From assembly GCF_046119375.1 (NCBI RefSeq), contig NW_027362764.1, forward strand, positions 804,636,001 through 804,700,000: DNA of 64,000 nt, given 5' to 3'. Source of the DNA: Phyllobates terribilis. Taxonomy: Eukaryota. The notes beneath the pieces are model-generated. The model made no database searches, was not told the DNA's origin, and saw only the letters and a list, made by a program, of their open reading frames with translations. The stretch's first letter is position 1. Each line of letters starts with the position of its first letter. Of the stretch, positions 1,521 to 37,724 are shown one piece after another. The position numbers and the translations under genes were made by a program.

Positions 1521-1524
1521 CCAG

Positions 1525-2505
1525 TATCAGGACGTACAGCAGTATGTGGGGGTATCAAGACGTACAGCAGTATGTGGGGGTATCAGGACGTACAGCACTA
1601 TGTGGGGGTATCAGGACGTACAGCACTATGTGGGGGTATCAGGACGTACAGCACTATGTGGGGGTATCAGGACATACAGCAGTATGTGGGGGTATCAGGA
1701 CGTACAGCAGTATGTGGGGGTATCAGGACGTACAGCAGTATGTGGGGGTATCAGGACGTACAGCAGTATGTGGGGGTATCAGGACGTACAGCAGTATGTG
1801 GGGGTATCAGGACGTACAGCAGTATGTGGGGGTATCAGGACGTACAGCACTATGTGGGGGTATCAGGACGTACAGCACTATGTGGGGGTATCAGGACGTA
1901 CTGCACTATGTGGGGGTATCAGGACGTACAGCACTATGTGGGGGTATCAGGACGTACAGCAGTATGTGGGGGTATCAGGACGTACAGCAGTATGTGGGGG
2001 TATCAGGACGTACAGCAGTATGTGGGGGTATCAGGACGTACAGCAGTATGTGGGGGTATCAGGACGTACAGCAGTATGTGGGGGTATCAGGACGTACAGC
2101 ACTATGTGGGGGTATCAGGACGTACAGCAGTATGTGGGGGTATCAGGACGTACAGCACTATGTGGGGGTATCAGGACGTACAGCACTATGTGGGGGTATC
2201 AGGACGTACAGCACTATGTGGGGGTATCAGGACGTACAGCACTATGTGGGGGTATCAGGACGTACTGCACTATGTGGGGGTATCAGGACGTACAGCACTA
2301 TGTGGGGGTATCAGGACGTACAGCAGTATGTGGGGGTATCAGGACGTACAGCAGTATGTGGGGGTATCAGGACGTACAGCAGTATGTGGGGGTATCAGGA
2401 CGTACAGCAGTATGTGGGGGTATCAGGACGTACAGCAGTATGTGGGGGTATCAGGACGTACAGCACTATATGGGGGTATCAGGACGTACAGCACTATATG
2501 GGGGT
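1525..2505. repeat. 28-bp minisatellite (TATCAGGACGTACAGCAGTATGTGGGGG)n, about 35 copies
   Basis: Directly visible tandem unit with a CAGT/CACT variant position. Confidence 0.97.
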
Positions 2506-3494
2506 ACTGGCAGCCACTGATCTCCGAGCTCCTATATTGTGGTGGCTTCTCCCATCCTGCAGCACATGGAGCATCACCCCCATCATTCATCTATCACCAA
2601 ACAGGATGATCTGCTCATCGCTCTGCAGACAATACCCCCCCTCACTTCCAGGTACATTAACCCCTTCCCGGCAGTTCCCTCCGCTCCTGGCTCTGGTGCA
2701 GACACTGCGGCTTTATCATTAACCCCTGGCTGTCCTATGATTACATACGGGAGCACAGAGCCGTCACCCCCGTCCACACGGCTGACTCCCACCCTCCGTT
2801 ACCTGCCCGGATTCTCCACCCTGTCCATCAGTGACCTGGGCGTTGGGTCCTAGTGCCGCCAGCAATGCTCTGCCGATTACACAGATCGTCCCTCATATAA
2901 TCTATGATAATAGATGAAGGTGAACGCTTCTGTGATCGGGGGATGTGATCTGCCGACTACACCGGACACCTCTCCTCCCCGGGGCCGGAGCGGCTCTCCC
3001 GCTCATTACGCGGAGATGACACGACCCTCGTATACAGAGATCCCGCTCCATGTACAGTGACCGGTAATAACCGCACGAGAACCGCTCGTCCTGACACCGC
3101 GTGAAGAGAAAGAGCGTGAGAAGCGGAGAGTGACTGAGCGGGAAGCTGAAACTCACCAAAGCTCCTGAGGATGATTGTGCGGAGGAAGCAGCAGATGAGC
3201 GCTGACAGCTCTATTCTATACAGACACGATCACACCATGTCTACATGCGGCTTCTACAGCAGGAGCCGCCGATGTCACTGTATGTCTATATACCCGGCAC
3301 ACGGAGCTGTACAGCGGCTCCTCGATCAGTCGAAACATAGAAAAGCCTCACACTCCCCTTTCACTATTACAGACGCGGGTTACAAGCGGTGATTGATCAG
3401 GATGTAAGAAATAAGATTTCTGCAGGACATCGGCCCCTTCCCTCCAATAACTAATGACCCTGAAGCAGCTCCCTGTACACACTATAATATCTGC

Positions 3495-3977
3495 CGGGAA
3501 CAAGGCGGTGGCACTGATCATACAGCTCTGCAGGGACAAGGTGATGGCACTGATCATACAGCTCTGCAGGGACAAGGTGGTGGCACTGATCATACAGCTC
3601 TGCAGGGACAAGGTGGTGACACTGATCATACAGCTCTGCAGGGACAAGGTGGTGACACTGATCATACAGCTCTGCAGGGACAAGGTGGTGACACTGATCA
3701 TACAGCTCTGCAGGGACAAGGTGGTGACACTGATCATACAGCTCTGCAGGGACAAGGTGGTGACACTGACCATACAGCTCTGCAGGGTCAAGGTGGTGAC
3801 ACTGACCATACAGCTCTGCAGGGTCAAGGTGGTGACACTGACCATACAGCTCTGCAGGGTCAAGGTGGTGACACTGACCATACAGCTCTGCAGGGACAAG
3901 GTGGTGACACTGATCATACAGCTCTGCAGGGACAAGGTGGTGACACTGATCATACAGCTCTGCAGGGACAAGGTGGT
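3495..3977 (-). repeat. 36-bp tandem array (13 full copies plus a partial) derived from the H1 3' processing region
   Basis: CAGGGACAAG recurs every 36 bp from 3531 to 3963. The array abuts the H1 stem-loop. Confidence 0.95.
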
Positions 3978-3993
3978 GGCTCTGATAAGAGCC
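3978..3993 (-). terminator. Histone 3' stem-loop of H1 (GGCTCTTATCAGAGCC)
   Basis: Matches the canonical 16-nt SLBP hairpin. It lies 30 nt after the stop and is followed by ACCACC and an HDE-like AGAGCTGTA. Confidence 0.95.
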
Positions 3994-4023
3994 TTTGTGG
4001 TGTAATAACAGGACGGCTTTGGA

Positions 4024-4665
4024 TTATTTCTTGGCCGCGGGCTTCTTGGCTTTAGTAGCCTTCTTAGCTGGACTCTTGGCAGCTTTGGGTTTGGCCGCCT
4101 TCTTAGCCGGGCTTTTAGTCACTTTCTTGGGCTTCGGAGCGGGCTTCGGCTTCTTGGGGCTCTTGGCTGCCTTCTTTGCCGCGGCTGCTGCGGGCTTCTT
4201 GGTCTTTTTCGGGCTTTTCTTGGACGCGGTCGGAGCCTTCTTGAGTTTCTTTGGGGATTTGGCCGCGAGTTTCTTGGGCTTGGCCGCAGGCGCTGGCTGC
4301 TTCTTGGCCGGTTTGTCTTTAGTCTCCTGCTTCTTATTCAGCTTGAAGGAGCCGGAGGCGCCGCTGCCCTTCACCTGGAGCAGGGCGCCCTTGGTGACCA
4401 GAGACCTGACGGCCAGCTTCAGGCGGCTGTTGTTCTTCTCCACATCGTACCCGCCGGCAGCCAGAGCCTTCTTCAGGGCGGCCAGAGACACCCCGCTGCG
4501 CTCCTTAGAGGCGGACACGGCTTTGACGATCAGCTCGGACACGCTGGGACCGGAGGGTTTCTTGCTCTTCTTGGCGCCCCCTGCGGCGGATTTCTTCGGC
4601 TGCTTCTTGGCTTTGGCGGCCGGTTCGGCGGGAGGAGGAGCGGCGGCTGGCGCGGTCTCTGCCAT
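4024..4665 (-). CDS. H1: Somatic linker histone H1 (213 aa)
   Basis: Starts [18 protein letters not shown], has the globular domain ([37 protein letters not shown]...[11 protein letters not shown]) and a K/A/P-rich tail. The ATG is at 4665, not the track's 4710. Confidence 0.97.
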
Positions 4666-4732
4666 CGTGTGATGAGGAACAGACACAAGAATCTCCTGGA
4701 AGAAAAACACTGAGGACGGAGCTGGAGGCGCC

Positions 4733-4816
4733 TCTTATATATAGTCACACTGCGCACTGATTGGCTGCCTCCTCCTGAGCTTCTATTGGCTGACACTGGA
4801 CACAGGCCCCGCCCCC
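4733..4816 (-). promoter_or_regulatory. H1 promoter: TATA, two CCAAT boxes and a GC box
   Basis: On the minus strand: TATATAAG (about 4735-4742), CCAAT at about 4760-4764 and 4785-4789, and GGGGCGGGG at about 4807-4815. Confidence 0.75.
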
Positions 4817-8049: not shown

Positions 8050-9700
8050 GTGCCGTACCTCTGGGTTCAAAATGTTCACTATACACCTTAATAAAATCCT
8101 TGAGGGGTATAGTTTCCAAAATGGGGACACTTGTGGGGGAGCTCCACTGTTTAGGCACATCACGGGCTCTCCAAACGCGACATGGTGTCCGCTAACAAAT
8201 TGAATGGAAAATCGGCTCAAATTGTTAGCGGACGCCATGTTGCGTTTGGAGAGCTCCTGTGTGCCTAAACATTGGAGCTCCCCCACAAGTGACCCCATTT
8301 TGGAAACTAGACCCCCCAAGGCACCTATCTAGATGCATAGTGAGCACTTTGAACCCCCAGGTGCTTCACAAATTGATTCGTAAAAATGAAAAAAAAACAC
8401 TTTTTCATTTTTATGAATCAATTTGTGAAGCACCTGGGGTTCCAAGTGCTCACTATGAATCTAGATAGGTGCCTTGGGGGGGTCTAGTTTCCAAAATGGG
8501 GTCACTTGTGGGGGAGCTCCAATGTTTGGGCACACAGGGACTCTCCAAATGCAACATGATATCCGCTAACAAATTGTCGGCTCAATTTGTTAGCGGATAT
8601 CATGTTGCATTTGGAGAGTCCCTGTGTGGCCAAACATTGGAGCTCCCCCACAAGTGACCCCATTTTGGAAACTAGACCCCCCAAGGCACCTATCTAGATG
8701 CATAGTGAGCACTTGGAACCCCAGGTGTTTCACAAATTGATTCATAAAAATGAAAAAGTGTTTTTTTTTTCACTTTTTCATTTTTACGAATCAATTTGTG
8801 AAGCACCTGGGGGCTCCAAGTGCTCACTATGCATCTAGAAAGGTGCCTTGGGGGGTCTAGTTTCCAAAATGGGGTCACTTGTGGGGGAGCTCCAAAGTTT
8901 GGGCACAGAGGGGCTCTCCAAACGCAATGTGGTGTCCGCTAACAATTTGACCCGATTTTCCATTCATTTTGTTAGCGGATACCATGTTGCATTTAGAGAG
9001 TCCCTGTGTGCCCAAACATTGGAGCTCCCCCACAAGTGACCCCATTTTGGAAACTAGACCCCCCAAGGCACCTATCTAGATGCATAGTGAGCACTTGGAA
9101 CCCCCAGGTGCTTCACAAATTGATTCGTAAAAATGAAAAAGTGAAAAAAAAACACTTTTTCATTTTTATGAATCAATTTATGAAGCACCTGGGGTTCCAA
9201 GTGCTCACTATGAATCTAGATAGGTGCCTTGGGGGGTCTAGTTTCCAAAATGGGGTCACTTGTGGGGGAGCTCCAATGTTTGGGCACACAGGGACTCTCC
9301 AAATGCAACATGATATCCGCTAACAAATTGTCGGCTCAATTTGTTAGCGGATATCATGTTGCATTTGGAGAGTCCCTGTGTGGCTAAACATTGGAGCTCC
9401 CCCACAAGTGACCCCATTTTGGAAACTAGACCCCCCAAGGCACCTATCTAGATGCACAGTGAGCACTTGGAACCCCAGGTGTTTCACAAATTGATTCATA
9501 AAAATGAAAAAGTGTTTTTTTTTTCACTTTTTCATTTTTACGAATCAATTTGTGAAGCACCTGGGGGTTCCAAGTGCTCACTATGCATCTATAAAGGTGC
9601 CTTGGGGGGTCTAGTTTCCAAAATGGGGTCACTTGTGGGGGAGCTCCAAAGTTTGTGCACACAGGGGCTCTCCAAACACAACATGGCGTCCGCTAATTAT
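8050..9700. repeat. Array of alternating inverted (fold-back) repeats of about 185 bp
   Basis: CCCCACAAGTGACCCCATTTTGGAAACTAGACCCCCC alternates with its reverse complement about nine times. A 754-bp block repeats (about 8469 and 9223). Confidence 0.9.
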
Positions 9701-12930: not shown

Positions 12931-13309
12931 GATCCACTGGAGCGCGAGCAGCGACTGAGCGGGAAATTCAAATCCACCAACTGATCAGTGAATGAGAAGG
13001 AAACATTGGAGTAAAGCTCCGCCCACAGGAACCGACCAATCCCCGACCACAAGTTTCCGCCTTCTCTCCCCCAGCCCCGGCAGTGCACAGGACGCATCGC
13101 GCTGCTCTGGTCACACAGGTGCGGCTTCTATTACTGATCACGTGATGGATGTGACGTTATTCCTCTGCTTATTGCACTTTTCACAATATAGTTCACTCAC
13201 TACTAGATCCCCTATAATTATACAGATAGTAAGTGCGCGGAGGATACGGACAGAGGAGCAGAATGGCGGTTAATCATGAGAGTTCTCAGCTCGTCTTGGA
13301 GGATTTGGT

Positions 13310-13325
13310 GGCTCTGAAAAGAGCC
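13310..13325 (-). terminator. Histone 3' stem-loop of H3 (GGCTCTTTTCAGAGCC)
   Basis: Perfect canonical hairpin, followed by ACCAA and GACGAGCTG (HDE-like). Confidence 0.96.
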
Positions 13326-13354
13326 TTTGTGTTGTCCTCGGGGCCCGGGCAGAT

Positions 13355-13880
<526 letters not shown>

Positions 13881-15987
13881 TCTGCGTACAGTATTGAGCC
13901 GCCAATAGTGACCGACTACCTGGCCACATGACACACTTCCGCTCCCTGAGTCTCCATGTCCCGTACACGGCGCTGTACAGATCTCCCCATCATCGCTCTA
14001 CACTCCGGGCTGCACTGGTTTCTATAGATCACACATGGAGCGACCCCTCCCCCCGCAGAGCTCTGCGACATGACGTCCCCTGATATCAGTGCAGACTGCG
14101 GCAGACCCCGGAACACTGCGCCGCCCCCTCTCCCCTGTACAGAGCAGCAGGAATGTGTATAGAACAACCTGCTCTGCTAACTGCGATCGTCTGCAGCGTT
14201 GACATCTGTTCTGACCAGGACAATCGTCACCTGGGGAACATTCAATGAGCCCGGAAACTACCATGGAAGTGTATGATGTAGAGATCGGCGCATTGTTCTC
14301 AGAGCGATCACCGGCAGCTGAGATACAAAGGACCAGTGTAAATATATATTGACGTCCGCTCCATCCTGCGATCTCAGCTCGGGTCCGTCAGCCTCTGCTG
14401 CTGCTCAGGTTGTCGCTTCTCCTGCAGATTACTGGCTGCTGCAGTGGGGGATGGAGGGTGAGCAGACACTGGAGACGGACCTGATCTCTCCTCCCTGCTC
14501 TCTCCTTCCTCATGTGCTGAGGAGGAGGATCGTTTATTCTCATCATCTGGGCTGAGCTGATAAATCATCAATACTATCCCCAGGGCTCCATGATCAGCGC
14601 CAGCGCTTCCCTCAGCTGTGAGAAATGCAGAACTTTGAATAAAGGTGAATAAAGAAGCTGATGTTGGAGAATTCTGACTTCGTTTTGCAATTTCTTAGTT
14701 ACAGGTTTTCTTATGATTTCTGGTCTACAAGGTCACTCAGATGTCTGTACTCTGACAATAATGCAGGGAAATGAGAATTCGCTCTAAAATCGCGGATGCA
14801 CACGTGTCGCATTCGGTGAAGGTTTTCCTCACAGAATGCGACCATAAAATCCACTGCATAATACAGTATGAGCCAAACTAAGGAGATTTTAGGAATGTCA
14901 TCCGGTGTAGTCGCTGGATACAATCCTCCCATCACAGACCTGTTCATCTTTATCTGTGTTCACTGAAATTATGTATTAGATTTAGCGGATAGATGCAGTA
15001 TATATATGTATACCCCCATATAGTGCTGTATATGTATACCCCCATATAGTGCGGTATATCCCGATATCGTGCTGTGTGTATATATTGTGTATATATATAA
15101 ATATATATCTTTTCTTTTTCAAATATATATTTAAAAAATAAAAAAACAAATGTTACAATGAGCGGGAAATTCTAAATCACTAACTGCTCTGTGACCGACC
15201 AATCAGAGAGAAGGAGATGAACGCGTAACCGGTAACATACACGCCCCTGATCCGCGTCATCAGTATCCTCTCTGGTCCGCACAGCCGGGTGCTCATCTGT
15301 CCTGTGATCGGTGACTGCAGGGGATGTTCCGCCCGGTAGGACGATCGGGTGTGTATTTCTCCCCAGAGCAAACGTCAGGCTCCGATCACTGGGGAATTAG
15401 GAAATCACCGATCATGGAGAACGGCGGCAAGAAATGGTTAACACCGGCGTCTCCTGTGGGCGGAGCCGTGACCTGATGCTCAATGATGATTGGCTGAGCC
15501 CAGAATTTGAACTTCCCGCTCACTCCTCCTCGCTTTGTCCTCATCCATGTAACACGCGTCGCCAGTGCTGCGGATCTCGGTCGATCTGCTCGTGTATAGT
15601 GATCAGTGGCCGATCTCACTCCACACAGGGGAGATCAGACCCCAATCTGTACAGGGTCTTATGTCTCCAGATCTCTCCCCTGATCACAGCGCAGACCCTC
15701 ACTGCACTTCATGCCTCATTCTGCAGCCAGTGATCCGGTCAGATCCTCAGCCCTCACAGCTGCGACATCGGTCACCGATCACTTACACATCCCCCGATCT
15801 GCTCATCACCGAGCACTCGTCCCTTCTCTCCCCGGTCACTGATGTGACGGATCCCGGGAGCTCAGGGTGGGGGCTTCTGTTTCTCTGTCCTGCAGATAGT
15901 TCCCCTCATTACCGCAATCATCAGAGCACAGGACACAACCCCCGGCCCCGCAGCAGGAATCACAGCTTCTCCACTGTACATGTGGGC

Positions 15988-16003
15988 GGCTCTGATAAGA
16001 GCC
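15988..16003 (-). terminator. Histone 3' stem-loop of H4 (GGCTCTTATCAGAGCC)
   Basis: Canonical hairpin followed by GCCCA and GAGAAGCTGT (HDE-like). Confidence 0.95.
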
Positions 16004-16035
16004 TTTGGGGGGTGAGGATGGAGCGGAGAACACAA

Positions 16036-16746: not shown

Positions 16747-17375
16747 AGTGGATATAATCCCTGCTATTAGTGCTTGGCACAGTGGGTATAATCCCTGCCA
16801 TTAGTTCTTGGTACAGTGGGTATAATACCTGCCATTAGTGCTTGGCACAGTGGGTCTAATCCTTGCTAGTAGTGCTTGGCACAGTGGGTATAATCCCTGC
16901 TATTAGTGCTTGGCGCAGTGGGTATAATCCCTGCTATTAGTGCTTGGCGCAGTGGGTATAATCCCTATTAGTGCTTGGCACAGTGGGTATAACCCCTGCT
17001 ATTAGTGCTTGGCACAGTGGGTATAACCCCTGCTATTAGTGCTTGGCACAGTGGGTATAACCCCTGCTATTAGTGCTTGGCACAGTGGGTATAACCCCTG
17101 CTATTAGTGCTTGGCACAGTGGGTATAACCCCTGCTATTAGTGCTTGGCACAGTGGGTATAACCCCTGCTATTAGTGCTTGGCACAGTGGGTATAACCCC
17201 TGCTATTAGTGCTTGGCACAGTGGGTATAACCCCTGCTATTAGTGCTTGGCACAGTCTGTATAACCCCTGCTATTAGTGCTTGGCACAGTGGGTATAACC
17301 CCTGCTATTAGTGCTTGGCACAGTGGGTATAACCCCTGCTATTAGTACTTGGCACAGTGGGTATAACCCCTGCTG
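16747..17375. repeat. 34-bp minisatellite (GGGTATAACCCCTGCTATTAGTGCTTGGCACAGT)n, about 18 copies
   Basis: Directly visible. Confidence 0.96.
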
Positions 17376-17942
17376 TTTGTGACTCCTCATTCATCACCTC
17401 AGTCCTCTGATGAAGCCAGCCTTGGACAAAACATGTCGGGGAGGCTTGGAGTGAACTCTTGATCAGCTCTAGTGTTCTTGCAACTGACATCTATAATTGT
17501 CGTTAGAAAAGCTATCCTAGCTAGTGGACTGCAGACAGCAATCTAGGTAGGAGATATATTCGCTTTAGGAGAGTGAGATCCCATAGAGGAATCCATAAGA
17601 AATGCTGCACAGCAATATCACCTGGGTTATTTTAATCCTTGCTAAAAATAAGTCAAGTTTTATTCACATTCTCTCTAAAGTGAGGTCTATAATTTTTGGG
17701 TATGACTTTCTACAGTTCTCACACATTAGTGTTCTTTTACACTCCTACCATTCACACTTCCCAATGCTTTCCCCTCACTTCTTCCCCTGTGTTGCCTTCA
17801 TACACCTCCCCCCATATTGTTTCTCACTTCCACCAATAAAGCCCCCTATTCCTCCCCCTTTCATAAGGTCCTCACCTTTTCCTTCCCCCATATCCTCTCC
17901 CCTGAGATCAGCGGCGCCGGCTCTTGTGGGGACGGTGTGGGT

Positions 17943-17958
17943 GGCTCTTAGAAGAGCC
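17943..17958 (-). terminator. Histone 3' stem-loop of H2A (GGCTCTTCTAAGAGCC)
   Basis: Canonical 6-bp stem and 4-nt loop, followed by ACCCA and CAAGAGCC. Confidence 0.93.
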
Positions 17959-17994
17959 TTTGGTTGTGTGGATTGAGGAGATCGGCTGCAGCGC

Positions 17995-18600: not shown

Positions 18601-19189
18601 AACGTTTGTTCTTATCAGACAGATTGATGTAGTTATGGATTTTTGTATGTCACTTTGTAGATCAGACAGGTTTCCTCTTCTCGGGGATGGAGCTGCCCAT
18701 TATTGTTACATACATCGCTCCCCGATCTGCTGCGATAAATCCCAATGCTGGAATCCATGAAGGAGAGAAAGGATATGTGACTCGGAGAAGAAGATGAGGC
18801 CGGAATCCTCGCTCTGTGCTCCCAGCAGCGGTGGCCCCATACCCGTACAATGGCTTTAGTGGTGGGAGCAGAAAGGACGAGCTCCGCAGCAGCTTTATCT
18901 CGCAGGTGCTGCACAGATCGGAGGGTGTGGGGATTGTAGGTGGTCGGTGGACCAATGTCAGGCGGGAGCTGTGAGGTCAGAACATCTGGTGGGATCGCTG
19001 ACTGTAGGAGCAGTGAGGAGAGAGGAGTGCGGGCGGCGGCTGATTCCAGACTCAGATCCTCTGCAGATCGGGTTTACATCGTTCAGATGTCTGAGATCCC
19101 GTGTGTGACAGCCTGTAATATCGGTCTGCATATGGTCATAGTGAAGATGCTGTAGGATCGGACGAATAAGAAACCAGCCACAGCATCGT

Positions 19190-19811
19190 CAGGGACAAGG
19201 TGGTGACACTGACCGTACAGCTCTGCAGGGAAAAGGTGGTGGCACTGTTCATACTGCTCTGCAGGGACAGGGTGGTGGCACTGATCATACAGCTATGCAG
19301 GGACAAGGTGGTGGCACTGATCATACAGCTCTGCAGGGACAAGGTGGTAGCACTGATCATACAGCTCTGCAGGGACAAGGTGGTGGCACTGACCATGCAG
19401 CTCTGCAGGGACAAGGTGGTGATACTGATCATACAGCTCTGCAGGGAAAAGGTGGTGGCACTGACCATACAGCTCTGCAGGGAAAAGGTGGTGACACTGA
19501 CCATACAGCTCTGCAGGGAAAAGGTGGTGACACTGACCATACAGCTCTGCAGGGAAAAGGTGGTGACACTGATCATACACCTCTGCAGGGACAAGGTGGT
19601 GACACTGACCATACAGATCTGCAGGGGTAAGGTGGTAGCACTGACCATACAGCTCTGCAGGGAAAAGGTGGTGACACTGATCATACAGGTCTGCAGGGGC
19701 AAGGTGGTAGCACTGATCATACAGCTCTGCGGGGACAAGGTGGTGGCACTGATCATACAGCTCTGCGGGGACAAGATGGTGGCACTGATCATACATCTCT
19801 GCGGGGACAAG
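19190..19811 (-). repeat. Second, orphan array of the 36-bp H1-HDE-type unit (17 copies)
   Basis: Same unit and orientation as 3495-3977 but more diverged. It ends at GGACAAG (19811) with no stem-loop or histone gene upstream. Confidence 0.93.
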
Positions 19812-20066
19812 CCTGCCTGTCTAGCAGCCGTGCCCGCCAGCCTGTCTATCAGTCGTGTCCACCTGCCTGTCTATCCGCCGTGCCCGCCTGCTTATCTACC
19901 CGCATGATCATCTGCTGTGCCTGTCGGCTTCGGCCATCAGTCCCATGGGAGTCGCCTCCTCTCACACAAGGTCGATTGCAGAGTGGCACCTGGTTCACCT
20001 TCCCGGTCCCTGCTTGGTTCACGGAGTCGACTTAGTTACGCCCCTCTGGTCCCTCCTTGTATCACA
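19812..20066 (-). mobile_element. Truncated LTR fragment
   Basis: Begins TGTGATAC on the minus strand at 20066. Shares CTTAGTTACGCCCCTC with the LTR-like element at about 56218. Confidence 0.6.
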
Positions 20067-23582: not shown

Positions 23583-24657
23583 ACTCAAATCCAGTGTCTT
23601 TTTTTTTGGGAGGTCTAACACTTTTCCCATGCAACTCTGTCTTCACACCCAGACATGGGCATATGTGGCACCCCAGGGGTCTGGTTGCCACAGTGATAGA
23701 AATATCACGTCTGAGAGCAAGTGGTAGGTTCCCTGGTCAGGAGCCCTTGAACATGCAACACTTCCTGTCCCAGACCAGAGAGGGGAGGAACCTGCCCTAT
23801 ATAAACTGGATCTGGGGCGGGGTTAGAGTAGAGAAAGCAGAGGGAGAGTGAAGCACAAGCAGACACAGGAAAAGCAACATCTAGGAGCTCTGTAGGAGCA
23901 GGAGCTGAGTGCCAGGGACTGGAAGCAGATATTGCTCGTCCTGGCTGAAGACACTACGACCGGACAACGGAGTCCGAGGCTGTGAGGACTTATATATCCA
24001 GCAGCAGAAACCAGCCGGCAGGGGATTTCAGGTCCTCTGGCCATAGGAAGCCCGGAGGCTCAGTCACACACAAGGGACCGGTACCGCCAGCGAGGAGCGG
24101 AAGCTACCAGAGGGTCCAAGTCACCAGCCATACGGGTGAGCACCACACGGTATACTCAGGGACGTGGGCTACTTCCACTCGCTTACAGCAAGGTAGCCAG
24201 GAAGAATGCAGTCAGACGGGGAGGCCTACAACTCCACCTGGCCAGGGGAACTCCTGTTTGTTCACAGACTGACCAGGCCCCTTATGCTAGCCAGTACTCC
24301 CAGGAGGGTCTGCCTTATCATCATCAGTAAAGACCCTGAACTGCACTGCAAACACTCCCATCATCCACACTCACTGCCCTGAGGCTATACTCCTCCCGTG
24401 GGGAGTTATCCCATCCTTTGCTGCGCACACCACACCAGCCTCAGCGGTCTGCATCGCAGCGGCGGTACACCCTGACCGCAATCCATGGGTGGCGTAGTCG
24501 GACATTAAATCATAAAAACCCTATAAAAGACGGCCACTGGTCTGACCACCCTGAGCCACGGGATCGGGTCACCGCCACGGAGACTACAACCCCCAGAGAC
24601 CCGGCTCCGGGTAACCCACACACGTGCATACACGGCCCAGGGGGCACGTCAACCTTT

Positions 24658-24676
24658 TGGCGTAGTCTTCAGGATT
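24658..24676 (+). promoter_or_regulatory. Primer binding site complementary to the tRNA-Ser 3' end
   Basis: TGGCGTAGTCTTCAGGATT versus the complement of the vertebrate tRNA-Ser 3' end (TGGCGTAGTCGGCAGGATT), 17/19 match. Confidence 0.8.
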
Positions 24677-25080
24677 GTGACCAACCAGCCACAAACGTAT
24701 ATTGCGTGCCTGAAAAAGACTTTGCACTTACCTGAGTGAAGTTTCCCGCCATCCGGAGCCGTTTCCCGCCATCTTCAGTCGTCTCCCGCCATCTTCAGTC
24801 GTTTCCCGCCGACTTCAGCCGTTTTCCCGCCATCGGACGCCATCTTCAGGACGCCGCGCGGGAAGAAGAGGGGCGTGGACGTACAAACCATGCGAGACCT
24901 GAAGCCCCGCCCTACGCACCAACGCTGCGCAAGGTCCTGGAAGGAGAGAGAGCGACGCTGACGTCACCAGGACACGACGCAAGGTCCTCGCCCGGAGCAG
25001 CACCAGCGGAGCCGCGGCCGACGGAGGAAGAGAAACAAAAGGTAAGCCACGGTTAACTAGGGTGGCGGAAGGTACCAGGA

Positions 25081-26104
25081 ATGGAGGGAGCTCCCACCGC
25101 CAGTGCGGCTGCTGCCGCAGTAATGCCATTTACAATGCCTTACATCCCTGGAGCGGCCTGGCTGCCCCAATACTCAGGGGAGTCGCATACCCTAAGCGAC
25201 TTTAAAGACAAAACTGTACAGCCTACTTAAAGTGTACCCCCTGACAGAGGGACAAAAAGTAAGCAAATTGATAGGCAGGCTAACCGGCGCAGCCCAGCGT
25301 GAAGTAAAGTCCTGGTCAGTCAGGGACAAGGAGACCGTGAAGGAGATCTTAGCCCGTCTGAAGGACACTTTTGATACCCGTACCTCAGCAGAGATCAAAA
25401 TGAGATTTTATGGGTGCAAGCAACGGGCCCAAGACAGTATAAGAGACTATGCTTTGAATTTGCAAGAGGCCCTGGGAGCCATTAAACAGGCAGACCCTGA
25501 CAGTGTGCGGAATGCAGATGAACTGTTGACTGAGCAATTCATTGAGGGTCTGCTGTCCAACGCCCACCGAACCCAATTACGTGCAATGGCCTTGCAAAAC
25601 CCTGGGTTAGACTTTGCAAAGTTCAAAGACAGGGCCATCCGGGTGCTCCGAGAACCGGCACCGGGTAGCGCTGTAACCCACCGATGCCCTGCTATTACCT
25701 ATCACCAGGAGGCGGCGCCTTTGTCTGCAGAGTCTGTGGGAGCTGGTGCGCAGGCTTTGGATAAAGACCCGGCTGCAGACCGGCACCATCAGGTCCAAGA
25801 ACTGACCAAAAGCGTTGCCGCATTAACCAGGACTGTGCAGTCATTACAGGTAGCCTCTCCAGGAAGGATAAAGCTGGTCACCAGTCCGGAGGACGTTCCG
25901 TGGTGCCGACAGAGGAGGATCCCATCGTCCAGAGGAAGACTCAGCGACAGATACAACGAGGACGGACAACCCATCTGCTGCCACTGCAATCAACCCGGAC
26001 ATATGGCAAGGTACTGTCATTTAAACGGGCACAACCTGGGGCAGAGGGCCAATCCCCAGGCATTAGATCATCAGGCCCATCGAACTGGCATGATAAATAC
26101 GTAG
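25081..26104 (+). pseudogene. Gypsy gag with a +1 frameshift near 25213
   Basis: MEGAPT...WLPQYSGES joins ORF 25232-26104 if one A is removed from GACAAAACTG. CCHC knuckle CCHCNQPGHMARYC. Confidence 0.85.
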
Positions 26105-29100
26105 GGGGACGTCCAGTCTTGCCTGTGGTACTGGATGGCATTCCTATGAGTGCCCTACTAGACACCGGGTCACAGGTAACTACCATCCCTTATGTGCTCT
26201 TTAAGCGGTACTGGAATGACTCGGACATAACCCGCTACCCAGATGACGACCTGAGTATCATCGCCAGCAATGGTCAGCCCGTGCCGCAGGTGGGATTCAA
26301 AGAGGTGACCATTAAAATCGGTAAAGTTGAACTGGCGGCACAAGGACTGATTATTGTGGACATTGACCGTCGTGAGAGTCACCCTAAAATAACCTTGGGT
26401 ACTAACGTGATTGAAAATTGTCTTGCAGAGATAATTCTCATTTTACAGCAGGTTGCCAAGAACGCCAGTTCTGGCCAGCAGCGTGTCCTACAAAAGGAGA
26501 TCCGGGCACTGATGAAGCGGCAATAGGTGGAACTATCTGGTGGTGAGATTGGTAGCGTGAGAATGTGTGACCCGTTCCCTATTGCCATGCCCCCGAAAAG
26601 TGAGATGATGATATGGTGCCGGGCAGCTATTGGTCTAAGAGGTACAGACTACCAAGCAATGGTCGAACCCCTCTACTCAGACAGTAGGCCCACCATTTTG
26701 ACAGCACGGGGGGTGGTCGATGTACGCCATGGGAGGGTGCCCGTCCGCATCATAAATATCGGGGAGAGAGAAGTATACCTGCCCCGGTATGCCACGCTAG
26801 CCAAATTGTTCACCATAAACCAAAATTCTGTAAAGGCCGTAGAACCCTTGCCTCCGTCTCAACCAGAGGAAGGTAACGGCTCTAAGAAACCAATGGAAGA
26901 CTGGTGTCAGCAGCTGCATTTGGGTACTGACTCCACCCCCTCTCACCAAAAACAGGGAGTCTACCGGGTGGTTCAGGAGTACGAAAGAGTCTTTAGTAAA
27001 CACCCGCTAGACTTCGGGCGAGTAAAGGGGGTAGAGCATCACATCCCCACGGGAGACCATCCACCCATAAAGGAAAGATACCGACCTGTACCCCCTGCAC
27101 ACTATCAGCATGCAAAGGGGATGTTGCGAGACATGAAGGAGGCTGGGGTAATCAGGGACAGCTGTAGACCCTGGGCAGCTCCACTGGTTCTAGTGAAAAA
27201 AAAGGACAACACAATGAGAATGTGCGTAGACTACAGAAAGGTCAACCATATCACACACAAAGATGCGTACCCGTTACCTAGGATAGAAGAATCTTTAGCT
27301 GCATTAAAATCTGCTAACTTCTTCTCCACTTTGGATCTTACTAGCGGGTACTGGCAGGTTCCTGTAGCAGAGGCGGACAAGGAGAAGACTGCGTTGATCA
27401 CCCCGATAGGTCTCGGCGAATTAAACTGTATGCCGTTCGGGCTCTGCAACACACCAGGAACCTTCCAGCGGTTGATGGAATGCTGTCTGGGACACCGGAA
27501 TTTCGAGACAGTCCTGTTATACCTGGACGATGTCATCGTTTATTCCAAAACCTACGAGGACCATCTGAAACACCTGGCAGAGGTGTTTGACGCCCTGGCA
27601 AGCTACGGCCTAAAGGTGAAACCCTCCAAGTGTCATCTCCTGAAACCAAAGGTACAGTACCTGAGACACGTGGTGAGTGCCGACGGAGTGGCTCCCGACC
27701 CCGATAAGATCACCGTGATTAAGGACTGGCCAAGACCCTCCAACATAAAGGAAGTGCGGCAGTTCCTCGGGGTGGTAGGCTACTACCGAAGATTCATTCC
27801 TGGTTTCACCAAAATGGCAGCTCCTATGCAGGACCTCCTGATAGGTCAATCCAGGAAGGCCAAACACCAGAAGCCACCCTTCAGGTGGGAAAAGCTGGAA
27901 GAGGAGTCCTTCCGTCAGCTGAAGATGGCCCTCACGGGGGATGAAATCCTGGCGTACCCTGGCTACAGCCAGCCCTTTATCCTCCACACGGACGCGAGCA
28001 ACATCGGGCTAGGAGCCATACTGTCCCAGATCCAGCAGGGGAGAGAACGGGTAATCGCTTACGCCAGCCGAAAACTACAGCCCACAGAGAGAAACCCTGA
28101 GAATTATAGCTCATTCAAGCTAGAGTTCCTGGCAGTGGTGTGGGCAGTGACGGAACGTTTCAAGCATTACCTTGCCTCCTCCAAGTTCACCGTGTACACG
28201 GACAACAACCCATTGACACATCTGGACACTGCAAAACTTGGTGCCCTGGAGCAGAGATGGATGGCCCGCCTGTCCAACTATGAATTCACCATCAAATACC
28301 AGGCGGGACGCTCAAATGCCAACGCAGACGCCCTGTCCAGGATGCCGAACTTACCAGACGGGGGGAAAGATCCAGAGGAACTGGAAGAGATCGAACTCCC
28401 TGCGTTCCACCGTCATGGGATTACCCAGTATTCCCACCGTGTAAGGGACAGGCACTCTGCTACGTTCAATCCCTTACCCCACTACAGCTGGACAGAGACT
28501 CAAGACAGTGACCCCGCAGTCCGTCTGGTGAAGGAAATGCTGACACAGGCTGATGCCCGCCTTGACCCAGACGCCCCGGAGGAGACCAAACAGCTGTGGA
28601 AGGAGAAGAGTAAACTGTTTCTCTACAAGGGGAAGCTGTGCCGGAGAACTGTCAACTCCCGGACACATGAGCTGACCTGGCAGGTAGTGGTACCGAGACG
28701 GGACGCGGCTATGGTCCTGGAGGCATACCACGACGGAGCAGGGCACTTCGGAAGGAAGAAGCTGGAGTTCCTGTTGCGTGACCGGTTCTTCTGGGTAGAC
28801 ATGAGAGGGGCCATTGAGAGATGGTGCAGAGACTGCGGCCCATGCAACCTGAGGAGGAAGGACCGTGCCAGCCAGAAGACCCCCCTGCAGCCCATCATCA
28901 TGAAGCAACCACTAGAACTGGTAGCCCTGGACCATGTGAAGCTGGCTCCGAGTAGGTCCGGGTATGTCTACGCCCTCACCATCGTAGACCACTACTCCCG
29001 GTTCCTGGTGGAGGTCCCTGTCAAGGACTTAACGGCTCAAACAGCAGCTAGAGCCTTCCAGCAGCACTTCTGCTGTCCACACGGGTATCCGGAGCAAGTG

Positions 29101-30156
29101 TTGACTGACCAAGGTCCAGCCTTCGAAGCGGAGGTCTTCCAGGAGTTCTGCAACTTGTATGGCTGCAAGAAGATAAGGACAACGCCTTACCACCCCCAAA
29201 CCAATGGGCTGTGTGAGAAAATGAACAATATCGTCATTGATCTCCTCAAGACGTTGCCCCTGGAAGAACGCAGCCTGTTGCCGGAGAAGCTGCCAGACCT
29301 TATTGCCTTGTATAACCATATCCCAGTAAATTCCACCAACTGCACCCCGGCTTACCTAATGAGAGCAAAGCCTGGTAAGCTGCCAATTGACCTGGAGATG
29401 GGAGTCCAGACACCCGAGGACACCTCACCAGAAGCAGACTGGGACACGGAACGGCAGCAGCAGTACCGGAAAGTACAGGAGACTGTGGAGCGAAGTCTGT
29501 CTCAAGCAAGAGGAAGACAAGAGAGGACTTATAACCAACATGCTCCCGCTGTTCCCCTGGCACCTGGTGAGCAGGTCTTGAAGAGGAAGAGACGGCTCCA
29601 CAAGTTGGATGACCAGTGGGAGAAGGACCCGTACACCGTACTGCCCTCAAGCCATGAAAACCCAAAAGTATGTGTCATCAGTAAGGATGGAGGAGAGACC
29701 ACAGCCACTGTCTCCAGAGACCACCTGAAGAAGTGTCCCGAGCAGCTACAAGGTGCTGAAGAAGACCAGGATATCCTTCAACCCGCAGAGGAAAAGGAAG
29801 AAATGATCAGTACACTACTTGGAGACTTTCCCCGGTCCTGGACTCAAATCAACAACGCAGTCGTGGTACCCGTCCTCACCTTTCTCCAGCCAGCCCCTCA
29901 AGGGCCTACAGAAGAACAGGTAGTGTCAGAAGAGCAGCCAGCCCAGGAGGCAGAAGGATCCATACAAGCAGCCCAGGAGAATCAACCCTCTGCTAGTAGT
30001 GAGCCTGTCGTGCCCCTAGTAAGCCAAAGAGTACGCAGGAAGCTGCCAGGCCTACCCGCAACACCTCCTACACCCTGTAGTGCAGAGCCAGATAGTGGGT
30101 TACGTAGGTCCACCAGGAGCACTAGAGGACAGATGCCCACTCGCTGGAGAATCTAA
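26020..30156 (+). pseudogene. Gypsy pol (PR-RT-RNaseH-IN) with one in-frame stop at 26524-26526
   Basis: Protease LLDTGSQ, RT YLDDVI, RNase H HTDAS, integrase HHCC (HDGAGHFG...CRDCGPC) and DDE core (VALD, LTDQG, GLCEKMN). Confidence 0.95.
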
Positions 30157-32509
30157 TGCCAAGTATATATCTACCTGTACATACGTAAAAGTTGAAAATG
30201 TTTGATGTTTTTGTTACTTGGTTATTAATTATGTCTTTCTAGTTTTCCTAGTTCATGGACTGACAGGTTATGGACGCTGAATAACCGGAACTACATTGTA
30301 AAGAGTTGCACTTGGTGCCTCTTGCCAAGACTGCCACGGAAGAAAAACCTGTCTGGCGTGGCCCCGTGTGGTCCAAAGTAGTTCGCTTCACCTTGCAGCC
30401 ACGCCCAGGGCCAACGTTTGGGGTTTACTTTGGACAGGTCCCCTACTCTGTTCTAAGACTTCACCTTGGGTGATATGGACACCCGGTTACGGAAATGCCG
30501 TGACCATCAAGACAAAATGTACTTTTTCCTGTTATTGTTTATACCCTGTTATATTATGTTTCAAAAATGTGTTTAGTCCCGGAGTACTAAAATTCACTAG
30601 GGGGGAATGTGGCACCCCAGGGGTCTGGTTGCCACAGTCATAGAAATATCACGTCGGAGAGCAAGTGGGAGGTTCCCTGGTCAGGAGCCCTTGAACATGC
30701 AACACCTCCTGTCCCAGACCAGAGAGGGGAGGAATCTGCCCTATATAAACTGGATCTGGGGCGGGGTTAGAGTAGAGAAAGCAGAGGGAGAGTGAAGCAC
30801 ATGCAGACACAGGAAAAGCAACATCTAGGAGCTCTGTAGGAGCAGGAGCTGAGTGCCAGGGACTGGAAGCAGATATTGCTCGTCCTGGCTGAAGACACTA
30901 CGACCGGACAACGGAGTCCGAGGCTGTGAGGACTTATATATCCAGCAGCAGAAACCAGCCGGCAGGGGATTTCAGGTCCTCTGGCCATAGGAAGCCCGGA
31001 GGCTCAGTCACACACAAGGGACCGGTACCGCCAGCGAGGAGCGGAAGCTACCAGAGGGTCCAAGTCACCAGCCATACGGGTGAGCACCACACGGTATACT
31101 CAGGGACGTGGGCTACTTCCACTCGCTTACAGCAAGGTAGCCAGGAAGAGTGCAGTCAGACGGGGAGGCCTACAACTCCACCTGGCCAGGGGAACTCCTG
31201 TTTGTTCACAGACTGACCAGGCCCCTTAACCAACACACGTACATACACGGCCCAGGGGGCGTGTCATATACACTTTCTGATTTTGTCTATTTGCTCTTGT
31301 CCTCCTCCTTCTCCTCATCCTCCTCGATATCACTACCATATCTACTATATCACCATATCTACATCTCTTGCAAGGGGCATTGGAGTGCCTCCAATTTGTT
31401 TGCTGCCATTGCATTCACTGCACAGGCAAACAGTTTGGGAGACCCACTTCCTAATAATGGGAACATTTTTTTATGAGGCCCTCCTCTACATCTCTTGCAA
31501 GGGGCATTGGAGTACCTGCAAATTTTTGGCAGCCATTGCAGTCACTGCATATGCAAGAACAGTATGGGAGACCCACTCCTTTCTAATGGGAACATGTCAT
31601 ACTCGTTACTGTGGCCCTGCTCTATGTGTCTTTAAATTGTTATTGTTTTTTTTTTACAAATTTTGGCAGTTGTTGCACTCACTGCATACCCCATAACTGT
31701 ATATCAGACCCGTTCCTTTCTAATGGGAACATGTCGTACTCGTTACTGAGGCCCACCTTTTATGTGTATTTAAATTAGTATTGGGGTTTTCCCAAAATTT
31801 TGGCAGCCCTTGCAGTCACTGCATACGCAATAACAGTATAGGAGACCCACTAGTTAATAATTGGAACAACAAAGCATAGCCGGCTGATGGCTCTCTAACC
31901 ATAGGCTTTGTCACTTTCAGATTCCCTCCTTCGTAAATGAAACAGGAATCGGGATGCGTCAAACACCACATGGCCAGGTTGCAAAATGTTAAAATGACAT
32001 TTACCGTTGAATGTATTTTTCACTTTTGAAATCAATCCAAAAGTGCAAAAACGCATCAAAAACGCTATGTGTGAACATAGCCCAAAGTGTGGAGGAGCAT
32101 TTTTGGTTTTGGTTATTTATTTTGCCTTATATACAAGTCATTACCCTGGAAAGGATGTTCCTTAACATTTTTCCCAGGAAAATCCATTTTGGTTTAGTTT
32201 TTGTATGTTTTATTGTGAGTCCGTAAAAGTGGCGTAATACTCTGACAACGTTGTTGACAGCAGTGATCTGCGAGTCAGAGATGCTTCCAGGGGTCTTCCT
32301 CATTCTGTCCCCATGTCATTTGAGCACTGTTCCCATCAATTAGGGCAATTTTTAGGCCCTCTGCAGACCGCCGGTGGGAGCCGCCGGAAAAATGCTCGAG
32401 TTTCCCATAGACTTACATTGGGCTCATTACTCGGGTCGAGCACACGAGTATTCCAATGTGTTCGACCCGAGCATCGAGCACCCGAGCATTTTAGTGCTCA
32501 CTCATCACT

Positions 32510-34829: not shown

Positions 34830-36690
34830 TGCCTTGTCTAGGTTCCGGCTTAAAAAATATTTTGACCAAAACAAAAGCTGCAGCTATGTATGTGATATGG
34901 TGTTCGGTGGGAACTATGTAAAACTTCCTTCTGATCCGACCATTGTGTTTCAGAAAAAATTGAACAACTTGATTATGGAGGCCTTTCAGAACGGAGTGAT
35001 TGATAAGAATGAAAAAGATTTCCTGTCAACATCCCATCCAGTTGTACCAACTTTCTATCTTGTACCAAAGGTGCTCAAATCACTAATTAACCCTCCTGGT
35101 AGACCTATAGTTGCAGGAATCGGCAGTCTAAATGAACGTCCATGTGAGTTTGTTGCTTTTTTCCTACAGCCACTGGTAACGAGTTTGAAATCTTATGAAC
35201 GTGATACTGTACATTTATTAGAGATTCTTGAAGTTTTGAGAGTACCAACAAGTGTGCTATTGGTTTCATGGGATGTAGAATCCCTCTATACTTGTATTGA
35301 CCATGACCTGGGTCTTGACGCTGTTTCTACCTCCCTGGAAAAAAATCTCGGAGGTAAAACCACACATAACAAGTTCCTCCTAGACCTACTGGCCTTTACA
35401 CTTAGACAGAATTATTTTGTCTTTGACCGGACCTTCTACAGGCAGATCACCGGAGGGGCGATGGGTGCGCGTTGTGCGCCCTCCTTTGCCAACCTATTTA
35501 TATTGGTGGGAGGAAACACACGTGTACCCGTCCTGTCGGTTCTGTGAGTCTGTCTGTGGCTGGTTCCGGTACATAGACGATATTCTGTTTCTGTGGATTG
35601 GGTCAGAAGAGACCTGTCAGGAATTTATCAGTGAATTGAATACTAATCTGTTCAATATACGTCTCACCTGGCAGAAATGTGATGGAATTTTTAGATGTCA
35701 AATTGACTCGAAGTGGGGACCAGAGCCACGCAAATCTGCATCGTAAGACGACTGCGACGAACAGTCTGTTGCATTTTAATAGTTTCCACCCACAACAGCT
35801 TAAGGACAGTATCCCGGTGGGACAGTTTCTGAGGGTTACGCAAAATTGTAGTTTGAATTCGGGTTTTATCTCACAGATATCTCGCAGATTTGACTGAACG
35901 TTTTCGCACCCGTGGTTATCCTAAGAGAGTCATCAGCAAAGCATTCAACACAGCAAATCTACAGGACAGGAGGGACTTACTGAAACCAAAAAACAAGCAA
36001 AATGGTAATAAGGATAAAATTTGGGTCATTACCACGTATAATAATCAGTGGCATGACATTAGGTTTCTATTAAACAAGAACTGGAGCATGCTATCTTCTG
36101 ATCGTAAGCTCCAATGCATTGTTCCCCACAGAACGCTACTAACTGCGAGAAGAGGCAGAAATCTACGCGACAATCTAACAAGAAGTCACAAGACCTTCTA
36201 CGAGAACGGAAACAGGTACGTCTCTTCACGGATCCTTTCCTTGTGGAAACTGTTCAATCTGCCAGTAACAAGTATCTTTGTCGAACAGGCCAAAAATAAA
36301 GAATATGTCTTAAAGAACTACATCAATTGCCGTACAACCAACGTGGTATATGTCCTTACATGCCCTTGTGGAAAGAACTACGTGTGACAAGCGTCGCAAG
36401 AACTACACAAAAGGATACAGCACCATTTTTCAGATATTGCTTTGGCAGAAAAATACCGAAAGAAAGGAAAGATCATCTCTACTGTCGCCGAACACTATTT
36501 GGCGTGTCATAACAGTCGACTGTCAGGCACAAGGATTGTAGGACTGGAAAGGGTCATTCAAAATATCAGAGGGGACAATGTATCACACCCATTACTACAA
36601 AGTGAATCGCGCTGGATTTTTAAATTGAACAGCATAGCACCAAATGGGATAAATGAAAATCTCCTATTTACAGGGTTTTATAAACGATAG
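34830..36690 (+). pseudogene. Penelope-like retroelement RT and GIY-YIG endonuclease, disrupted
   Basis: PTFYLVPKV..GRPIV, SWDVESLYT, GAMGARCAP, FRYIDDI, then NVVYVLTCPCGKNYV*, VAEH..CH, and ESRWIFKLNSIAPNGINE. Several frameshifts and stops. Confidence 0.92.
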
Positions 36691-37645: not shown

Positions 37646-37724
37646 CCCTTTTGTATCTTCAGGTTTCCACTCTTTTCTATTCACAGGTTGCTAAAATGCC
37701 AGTTTATTCCATATATCTCTAGAC

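What the first reader, a model, noticed from the sequence alone, without database searches (positions are those of the whole stretch)
3495..3993. H1 3'-processing signal amplified into a 13-copy tandem array of U7 binding sites
Seen: on the H1 sense strand the sequence reads GGCTCTT-ATCAGAGCC-ACCACC-TTGTCCCTGC-AGAGCTGTATG, then repeats ATCAGTG(T/C)C-ACCACC-TTGTCCCTGC-AGAGCTGTATG 13 times. Each 36-nt unit is the 3' arm of the stem-loop, the cleavage-site ACCAC and the downstream element. Known: the histone downstream element pairs with the U7 snRNA 5' end (vertebrate ...UUACAGCUCUUU...), and AGAGCTGTA is a 9-nt perfect complement at the normal 15-16 nt spacing. It is the best HDE match among the four genes here. 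Inference: read-through H1 pre-mRNA would carry 13 U7 sites but one SLBP site. This could give fail-safe cleavage, U7 snRNP titration, or altered termination and 3'-end choice. It could also be neutral slippage.
Basis: partly seen in the sequence, partly recalled or inferred. Interest (0 to 1): 0.82.

Follow-up and report, generated by a model that had tools for sequence, protein, structure and literature searches.

The report
Minisatellite grown from histone H1 tail
Behind an intact histone H1 gene of the golden poison frog, the 36-base signal that tells the cell where to cut the H1 message has been copied head-to-tail about 13 times; the origin is real and seems undescribed, but the extra copies look like ordinary repeat growth, not a working device.

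Summary
A 36-bp tandem array (window 3483-3986, minus strand = H1 sense) starts inside the loop of a genuine H1 stem-loop. Unit 0 is the real signal: 3' arm, ACCACC, spacer, AGAGCTGTA. Twelve full copies and one decayed copy follow, giving 13 intact U7-complementary cores and one SLBP site.

The direction of origin is clear, because the unit carries a piece of the universal stem-loop. So the H1 tail seeded the repeat.

My tests give no sign that the extra copies are selected:
- A second, older array of the same unit (19178-19810) has no stem-loop and unrelated flanks, and its cores mutate as fast as other positions.
- The H1-linked array has too few mutations to test.
- A third of the window is minisatellite.
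- A 9-bp U7 duplex without SLBP is expected to be a poor substrate.

Contigs from RNA libraries of three species labels hold the unit, so it is probably transcribed somewhere. No contig joins an intact stem-loop to the array.

This scan had already found the same repeat family on other DNA of this genome (Phyllobates terribilis). Three follow-ups also judged it neutral.

Most likely this is a neutral minisatellite. A backup cleavage, termination or U7-recruiting role is not excluded.

The parts
4024..4665 (-). Intact histone H1 coding sequence (213 aa plus stop)
   Evidence: Translation. It matches the Linker_histone family and Phyllobates terribilis H1 proteins. tblastn finds it as the only H1 in the window.
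4734..4816 (-). H1 promoter elements: GC box, two CCAAT boxes and TATATATAAG
   Evidence: Read directly from the sequence. The motif names come from general knowledge and were not tested.
3978..3993 (-). H1 3' stem-loop GGCTCT-TATC-AGAGCC, the only SLBP-type site
   Evidence: Rfam Histone3 match at 3952-3998, 33.4 bits, E 2e-6, just under the gathering score of 34. The MFE fold keeps this hairpin.
3951..3986 (-). Unit 0: loop end and 3' arm (ATCAGAGCC), ACCACC cleavage region (3972-3977), spacer (3962-3971), HDE core AGAGCTGTA (3953-3961), TG. This is the working processing signal.
   Evidence: There are 9 contiguous Watson-Crick pairs with the mammalian U7 5' end, starting 17 nt after the stem.
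3519..3950 (-). Units 1-12: twelve full 36-bp copies. Each has a mutated arm (AGTGYC), ACCACC (one has ATCACC) and an intact AGAGCTGTATG.
3483..3518 (-). Unit 13: degenerate terminal copy (ATCAGTGCCACCGCCTTGTTCCCGGCAGA...). It lacks the HDE and marks the distal edge of the array.
19178..19810 (-). Orphan array of the same unit on the same strand: 16 full units plus partial units at both ends, about 90% alike, with no stem-loop. The proximal edge abuts a 25-bp repeat.

Best explanation
A 36-bp piece of the H1 3' flank was duplicated in tandem by replication slippage or unequal exchange. It runs from the last bases of the stem-loop loop through the cleavage site to just past the U7-binding element. 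It has since behaved as a minisatellite.

Only unit 0, which still completes the stem-loop, works as the H1 processing signal. SLBP binds the hairpin, U7 snRNA pairs with AGAGCUGUA about 11 nt past the cut site, and CPSF73 cuts in ACCAC.

The 12 extra units are passengers. They would be transcribed only in RNA that escapes the first cleavage. Each offers a weak, SLBP-less U7 site, and they are not maintained by selection.

What is shown: the anatomy, the homology and the direction of origin. What is inferred: the duplication mechanism, the neutrality of the extra units and the weakness of their U7 sites.
For: - Homology: unit 0 matches the array consensus at 34/36 positions and the orphan-array consensus at 35/36. 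The unit contains part of the universal histone stem-loop, so the H1 tail is the source.
- Satellite behaviour: adjacent units are more alike than distant ones (0.981 against 0.950), and variants sit in blocks, for example units 3-5.
- Orphan array: 6 of 18 mutational events fall in the 9-nt core against 4.5 expected, so there is no depletion. Only 10 of 16 cores are intact.
- H1-linked array: 0 of 5 events fall in the core against 1.2 expected, P=0.24.
- Intact cores, 13/13 against 10/16: Fisher P=0.02. This falls to P about 0.10 after allowing for the lower overall divergence of array 1.
- Local repeat load: 22 kb of the 64-kb window lies in arrays of more than 10 copies.
- No stem-loop match inside either array.
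- Literature: a substrate left with 9 uninterrupted U7 pairs was cleaved less than 5%, even with a stem-loop. SLBP-independent cleavage needed a strong duplex of about 16 bp (PMC7026596).
- Distal flank: the unique sequence beyond the array is absent from RNA-library contigs.
Against: - All 13 cores behind the intact gene are perfect.
- Unit sequences are present in RNA-library contigs of three species labels. In organisms A and C their depth is comparable to or above H1 coding contigs. That is hard to explain by DNA contamination of such small libraries, so the repeat is probably transcribed and is older than one species.
- Unchecked scan notes say most H1 genes, and some H2B genes, of this genome carry such arrays.
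- With 29 units, my tests for selection have little power.
Confidence: 0.7

Rival explanations
1. Selected backup array. RNA that escapes cleavage at the stem-loop is caught by U7 snRNP at one of the downstream units. It is cut in that unit's ACCACC, and polymerase II terminates before it runs into the neighbouring DNA.
For: - Every extra unit keeps ACCACC at the ruler distance from an intact 9-nt U7 complement.
- There is no AATAAA or ATTAAA on the H1 strand for 2 kb beyond the array, so no obvious poly(A) backup.
- Histone 3' processing is coupled to termination and depends on the local U7 concentration (abstract of PMC4896052, listed).
- Arrays are reported behind many H1 genes in unchecked scan notes.
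Against: - The core is not more conserved than the rest of the unit.
- The same unit persists and decays without any gene.
- By the scan's unchecked notes, copy number ranges from about 8 to over 1,000, which does not suggest a tuned device.
- Nine base pairs without SLBP are expected to work poorly.
- No RNA contig joins an intact stem-loop to the array.
Confidence: 0.12
2. U7 snRNP recruiting or titrating RNA. Nascent transcripts of these arrays, and of the very large related satellites, bind many U7 snRNPs. They would either help build the histone locus body or soak up scarce U7.
For: - Unit sequences are found in RNA-library contigs of three species labels.
- U7 snRNP is about 500-fold rarer than the spliceosomal snRNPs (PMC7026596).
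- Amphibian oocyte 'spheres' at histone loci contain U7 snRNP (PMC12046345).
- Unchecked notes report blocks of about 180 to 1,200 units in histone clusters.
Against: - The strand of the RNA is unknown, since contigs carry no direction.
- The HDE core is not conserved in the orphan array.
- Neighbouring units can pair with each other through CUGCAG and AGCU, which partly hides the cores, although this fold is not significant (z -1.3).
- The frog's own U7 5' end has not been checked.
Confidence: 0.06
3. Reverse direction. A pre-existing satellite landed next to H1 and now happens to supply its 3' arm and HDE.
For: Arrays of the unit exist without a stem-loop. The commonest unit variant in RNA contigs and in the orphan array is ATCAGTGCC, not the genic ATCAGAGCC.
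Against: The unit would by chance have to hold, in the right order and spacing, 8 of 9 bases of the universal stem-loop arm, an ACCA-type cleavage site and a 9-nt U7 complement. The H1 stem-loop is ancestral to all animal replication-dependent histone genes (general knowledge).
Confidence: 0.03
4. Assembly artefact: the array or its copy number was created by mis-assembly.
For: Tandem arrays are hard to assemble, and copy number was not checked with long reads.
Against: DNA runs of two different samples hold 49-61% of the sampled words of 3300-4800. The unit also occurs in RNA-library contigs of other species labels.
Confidence: 0.02

Closest known systems
Canonical replication-dependent histone pre-mRNA 3' processing signal (stem-loop, ACCCA-type cleavage site, HDE paired with the U7 snRNA 5' end)
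   Same: Unit 0 has all three parts at normal spacing. The extra units keep the cleavage-site and HDE parts.
   Different: Normally there is one signal per gene. Here the part downstream of the loop is repeated 12 more times without a stem-loop. The loop is UAUC rather than the usual UUUC.
Newt (Notophthalmus, Triturus) satellite DNA interspersed with histone gene clusters and transcribed by read-through on lampbrush loops (Diaz et al. 1981 and Gall et al. 1981, cited in PMC5615363)
   Same: In both, an amphibian histone cluster is flanked by tandem repeats, and satellite RNA is thought to arise from failed termination downstream of genes.
   Different: To my knowledge the newt satellite unit is not derived from the histone processing signal. 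Here the unit is the signal itself. Read-through is not demonstrated here.
Ordinary minisatellites and satellites seeded from a short piece of unique or genic DNA
   Same: It shares a period of tens of bases, head-to-tail copies, blockwise variants, decayed edge units, copy number that differs between loci, and orphan arrays.
   Different: The seed is an RNA-processing signal, so each unit keeps a potential snRNP binding site. In the searched library no paper holds both 'histone downstream element' and 'satellite' in this sense, or 'minisatellite' together with U7 or histone pre-mRNA terms.
Backup 3'-end signals downstream of histone genes, such as the cryptic poly(A) sites used when U7 or FLASH is limiting in Drosophila (PMC4896052, listed; the detail is from general knowledge)
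   Same: A second chance to end the transcript downstream of the HDE.
   Different: Those are poly(A) signals and single sites. Here the repeats are HDE-type sites with no evidence of use.

Membership tests
Histone 3' processing signal | 16-nt hairpin with a 6-bp stem and 4-nt loop, recognised by SLBP | tested here: met
   Met for unit 0 only: GGCTCT-TATC-AGAGCC at 3978-3993, Rfam Histone3 33.4 bits against a gathering score of 34, E 2e-6. Units 1-12 and the orphan array give no match at E<=10.
Histone 3' processing signal | ACCCA-type cleavage site directly after the stem | tested here: met
   ACCACC follows the stem in unit 0 and is kept in 11 of the 12 extra units.
Histone 3' processing signal | Downstream element complementary to the 5' end of the species' U7 snRNA, about 10-15 nt past the cut | tested here: inconclusive
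   There are nine contiguous pairs with the human and mouse U7 5' end (sequence from PMC7026596). The duplex is -14.0 kcal/mol, in the top 1.8% of background 45-mers. The P. terribilis U7 could not be fetched. Only UCUUU is universally conserved in the U7 binding region (PMC5054213).
Histone 3' processing signal | Actual U7- and SLBP-dependent cleavage in vivo | not testable with these tools
   Only assembled contigs of RNA libraries were available. They carry no strand or end information.
Minisatellite / satellite DNA | Head-to-tail copies of a unit of tens of bases, far beyond chance | tested here: met
   TRF: period 36, 13.8 copies, score 880. There are 29 pattern matches against 0 in shuffles.
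Minisatellite / satellite DNA | Local homogenisation: neighbouring units more alike, variants in blocks, decayed edge units | tested here: met
   Adjacent-unit identity is 0.981 against 0.950 for units at least 3 apart. Units 3-5 share two variants. Unit 13 is degenerate.
Minisatellite / satellite DNA | No position-specific constraint within the unit | tested here: inconclusive
   Orphan array: 6 of 18 events in the core, no depletion. H1-linked array: 0 of 5, P=0.24. Power is low.
Minisatellite / satellite DNA | Copy number varies between loci and individuals | not tested
   The two arrays in the window have 13.8 and 17.3 copies. Other loci are known only from unchecked scan notes. No long reads of other individuals were examined.
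Selected backup terminator or processing array | RNA ends at the repeated sites, and conservation of the sites above the neutral rate | tested here: not met
   No conservation signal. RNA ends could not be tested. The distal flank is absent from RNA contigs.

The most novel reading that the evidence does not exclude
The H1-tail repeat family is kept because its nascent RNA works as a multivalent U7 snRNP landing pad at the histone locus. It would catch read-through transcripts for SLBP-independent cleavage and termination, and raise the local U7 concentration in the histone locus body. This 13-unit array behind an intact H1 gene would be the minimal working form.
Probability: 0.1. Interest if true: 0.75.

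Novelty: new variant of a known kind. Interest (0 to 1): 0.4.

Why it matters
If the extra units are neutral, this is a clean, datable example of a satellite family born from a defined RNA-processing signal. It is also a caution that motif-rich repeats need not be functional.

If they are used, it would be the first natural case of repeated U7 sites behind a histone gene. That would give a ready-made natural test of three things: how much U7 pairing alone, without SLBP, can drive cleavage; how cleavage is coupled to termination; and whether nascent RNA helps concentrate U7 snRNP at histone loci.

Either way, the array behind an intact gene here is a better substrate for such tests than the large orphan satellites.

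Tried and rejected
- DNA of other dendrobatid H1 loci (Ranitomeya imitator contigs of 35-100 kb, and the window's own chromosome) could not be fetched because the assembly files are too large. Orthologous flanks were therefore not compared.
- A protein search with the open frame through the array, meant to find such arrays in other assemblies, found nothing.
- An exact-pattern scan of the metagenome contigs found nothing.
- A search for an H2B gene or a second H1 remnant near the orphan array found none. The flanks of the two arrays share no homology.
- The text of the U7 survey paper does not print the Xenopus U7 sequence, and the Wu and Gall paper is not held. I therefore used the mammalian U7 as proxy.
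- RNA folding of the 3' UTR plus the first units shows no significant structure beyond the stem-loop (z -1.3).
- I rejected a coding reading of the long open frames across the arrays. They are a by-product of a 36-bp (12-codon) period and have no homologues.
- I considered a CTCF-like or minisatellite-core-like motif in the unit from memory only. I did not test it and do not rely on it.
- I did not lay the whole array on reads, because the tool states that it turns away long repeats. I laid 3900-4800 only.

Full report
**What is there**

Tandem Repeats Finder reports a 36-bp array at 3490-3986 with 13.8 copies, 97% matches and no indels. I read it on the minus strand, which is the sense strand of the adjacent H1 gene. 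The 3' UTR ends in GGCTCTTATCAGAGCC, followed by ACCACC, TTGTCCCTGC and AGAGCTGTATG. The 36 bases from ATCAG to GTATG then recur in exact register.
- Unit 0 (3951-3986) is the only one with the true 3' arm, AGAGCC.
- Units 1-12 (3519-3950) have AGTGTC or AGTGCC there, and all keep AGAGCTGTATG.
- Unit 13 (3483-3518) is degenerate and has no such element.
- The 27-nt stretch from ACCACC to the HDE matches 13 times here and 16 times in a second array. Shuffles give none.

**The gene and its neighbours**

The H1 gene is intact. It has a 213-codon open frame (4024-4665), and a GC box, two CCAAT boxes and a TATA box lie upstream.

Rfam's histone stem-loop model matches 3952-3998 at 33.4 bits, just under the gathering score of 34. 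It also matches the 3' ends of H3 (13285-13330, 35 bits), H2A (17918-17963, 31.6 bits) and H4 (15963-16008, 26.6 bits). All of these are on the minus strand. Nothing inside either array matches, even at E<=10. 'One SLBP site, many downstream elements' is therefore correct at the sequence level.

The window holds no H2B and no second H1.

**U7 pairing**

The human and mouse U7 5' ends are printed in PMC7026596. Against that sequence:
- The H1 element gives nine contiguous Watson-Crick pairs, AGAGCUGUA with UACAGCUCU, starting 17 nt after the stem.
- H3, H4 and H2A give six each.
- By duplex energy H1 (-14.0 kcal/mol) is no better than H4 (-14.6 kcal/mol). A value of -14.0 lies in the top 1.8% of background 45-mers from the window.

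The frog's own U7 could not be obtained. A survey states that only UCUUU is universally conserved in the histone-binding region (PMC5054213), so this step rests on a proxy.

**Direction of origin**

The unit carries 8 of the 9 bases of the loop end and 3' arm of the stem-loop, then an ACCA-type cleavage site, then the U7 complement, in the native order and spacing. The stem-loop is ancestral at animal replication-dependent histone genes. The H1 tail is therefore the source and the repeat is the derivative. The reverse would need a series of coincidences.

The variant closest to the genic sequence (ATCAGTGCC, one change) is found in three places: at the distal edge of this array, as the consensus of the second array, and as the form seen in all RNA-library contigs. 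That fits an old C-variant and a younger, locally spread T-variant.

**The second array**

At 19178-19810 the same unit, on the same strand, forms 16 full units plus partial units at both ends, about 90% alike.
- It has no stem-loop.
- Its proximal edge breaks inside a unit against a 25-bp repeat.
- Its flanks share nothing with those of array 1.

It shows that the unit can exist and persist without a gene.

**Tests for selection**

| Array | Mutational events in the 9-nt core | Expected | Result |
|---|---|---|---|
| Orphan array (19178-19810) | 6 of 18 | 4.5 | No depletion; 10 of 16 cores intact |
| H1-linked array (3483-3986) | 0 of 5 | 1.2 | P=0.24 |

The contrast of 13/13 against 10/16 intact cores gives Fisher P=0.02. 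After scaling for the twofold lower overall divergence of array 1, the expected number of core changes is 2.3 and P(0) is about 0.10. There is no significant evidence of constraint, and with 29 units there is also little power.

Adjacent units are more alike than distant ones, and variants sit in blocks. This is the usual signature of unequal exchange. Arrays with more than ten copies cover 22 kb of the 64-kb window, so this stretch of the genome makes minisatellites readily.

**RNA evidence**

I laid contigs of four RNA-labelled libraries on 3900-4800. Two are from the same species and two from other species labels.
- All four cover the H1 coding region.
- In the two same-species libraries and in organism C, the 3' UTR of this particular copy (3993-4023) has no depth. 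The expressed paralogues there have other UTRs.
- All four hold contigs matching the array units. In organism C these are 65-67 nt long, about one word plus one period, as expected of a collapsed tandem repeat.
- In organisms A and C their depth equals or exceeds that of the H1 contigs. In organism B it is about 1% of it.

These libraries are small (36-205 million letters) and the genome is about 12.6 Gb (PMC12208295), so DNA contamination alone is an unlikely source. The unit is probably transcribed somewhere and is shared by at least three species labels.

Contigs carry no strand, and the unit is multi-copy, so this says nothing about this locus. No contig joins an intact stem-loop to the array. 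One contig (X6, depth 20) joins H1 coding sequence directly to ...AGCCACCACCTTGTCC..., skipping the stop codon, the UTR and the 5' half of the hairpin. It probably comes from a damaged paralogue.

The unique flank beyond the array is not held by RNA contigs. No AATAAA or ATTAAA lies on the H1 strand for 2 kb downstream.

**Mechanistic expectation from the literature**

[quoted passage not shown] A substrate reduced to nine uninterrupted pairs was cleaved less than 5%, even with its stem-loop (PMC7026596). The extra units have nine pairs and no hairpin, so they are predicted to be poor substrates one by one. Thirteen in a row might still raise U7 occupancy. That cannot be settled by computation.

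**Identity of the genome and earlier scan findings**

The exact H1 protein is encoded on an 816,908,810-bp record of GCA_046119375.1. A Phyllobates terribilis H1 sits on a record of the same length.

This scan had already noted the same repeat family many times on other DNA of this genome. It was noted behind H1 genes, reportedly behind some H2B genes, and as orphan blocks of 8.7, 11.7 and over 43 kb. Three follow-ups judged it neutral satellite DNA derived from the H1 tail. I treated these notes as leads. My own tests on this window agree with them, but they do not independently check the other loci.

**Novelty**

The library searches for 'histone downstream element' with 'satellite', and for 'minisatellite' or 'satellite DNA' with histone-cluster or U7 and histone pre-mRNA terms, turned up no paper describing such a repeat. 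The P. terribilis genome paper does not mention histones, satellites or tandem repeats.

The nearest precedent is the newt histone-cluster satellite, transcribed by read-through on lampbrush loops (PMC5615363). As far as I know, its unit is unrelated to the processing signal.

**Verdict**

This is a real feature, correctly described. Its origin is interesting and apparently undescribed, but it is most likely a neutral minisatellite (about 0.7). A selected backup-cleavage, termination or U7-recruiting role remains possible (about 0.1-0.2 together). It is cheaply testable, because this copy sits behind an intact gene.

Noticed in passing
window 19178-19898: The orphan array of the H1-tail unit breaks off mid-unit against a 25-bp repeat (GCCTGCCTGTCTATCAGCCGTGCCC, 3.5 copies). 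It lies about 800 bp upstream of H2A, where an H2B partner would usually sit. The window has no H2B or H1 remnant. The array may mark a lost upstream histone gene.
   Followed up: partly
RNA library X6, contig laid at window 3962 / 4043: One RNA-library contig (depth 20) joins the H1 C-terminal coding sequence directly to ...AGCCACCACCTTGTCC... and the array units. It skips the stop codon, the 3' UTR and the 5' half of the stem-loop. It is probably a damaged H1 paralogue that is transcribed straight into its array.
   Followed up: no
window 3978-3993, 15986-16001, 17941-17956: The stem-loop loops are unusual. H1 and H4 have UAUC and H2A has UCUA. Only H3 (13300-13315) has the canonical UUUC. 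Three of the four Rfam scores fall just below the gathering threshold.
   Followed up: partly
window 1524-2506 and 16747-17381: Two other homogeneous minisatellites lie downstream of histone genes on the same strand. One has a 28-bp period and 35 copies, about 1 kb beyond the H1 array. The other has a 34-bp period and 19 copies, about 540 bp beyond the H2A stem-loop. Neither unit resembles a processing signal.
   Followed up: no
window 8098-9696: Four tandem copies of a 373-bp unit fold as long hairpins. They give strong but sub-threshold matches on both strands to plant MIR families in Rfam (MIR7723, about 100 bits against a gathering score of 200). This looks like a palindromic MITE-like repeat rather than a microRNA gene.
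   Followed up: no
window 23982-31216: A full-length LTR retrotransposon. Identical 96-aa open frames at 23982-24272 and 30926-31216 mark the two LTRs. Between them are gag-like, protease-like and a 1209-aa RT/RNase H/integrase open frame (26527-30156).
   Followed up: no
window 46685-64000: More than 17 kb of a 25-bp satellite (GTCACTGTACACCGGGCTGTATTAG) is interrupted by a 37-bp array (53752-56022, 61 copies, 99% alike). A short perfect block of a near-identical 25-bp unit lies at 44076-44232.
   Followed up: no
window 34834-43723: Fragments of several transposons lie between the histone genes and the satellite: a reverse-transcriptase-like open frame (34834-36387), a hAT-like transposase (37990-39430) and two Tc1/mariner-like transposase pieces (40400-40996, 42995-43723).
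   Followed up: no
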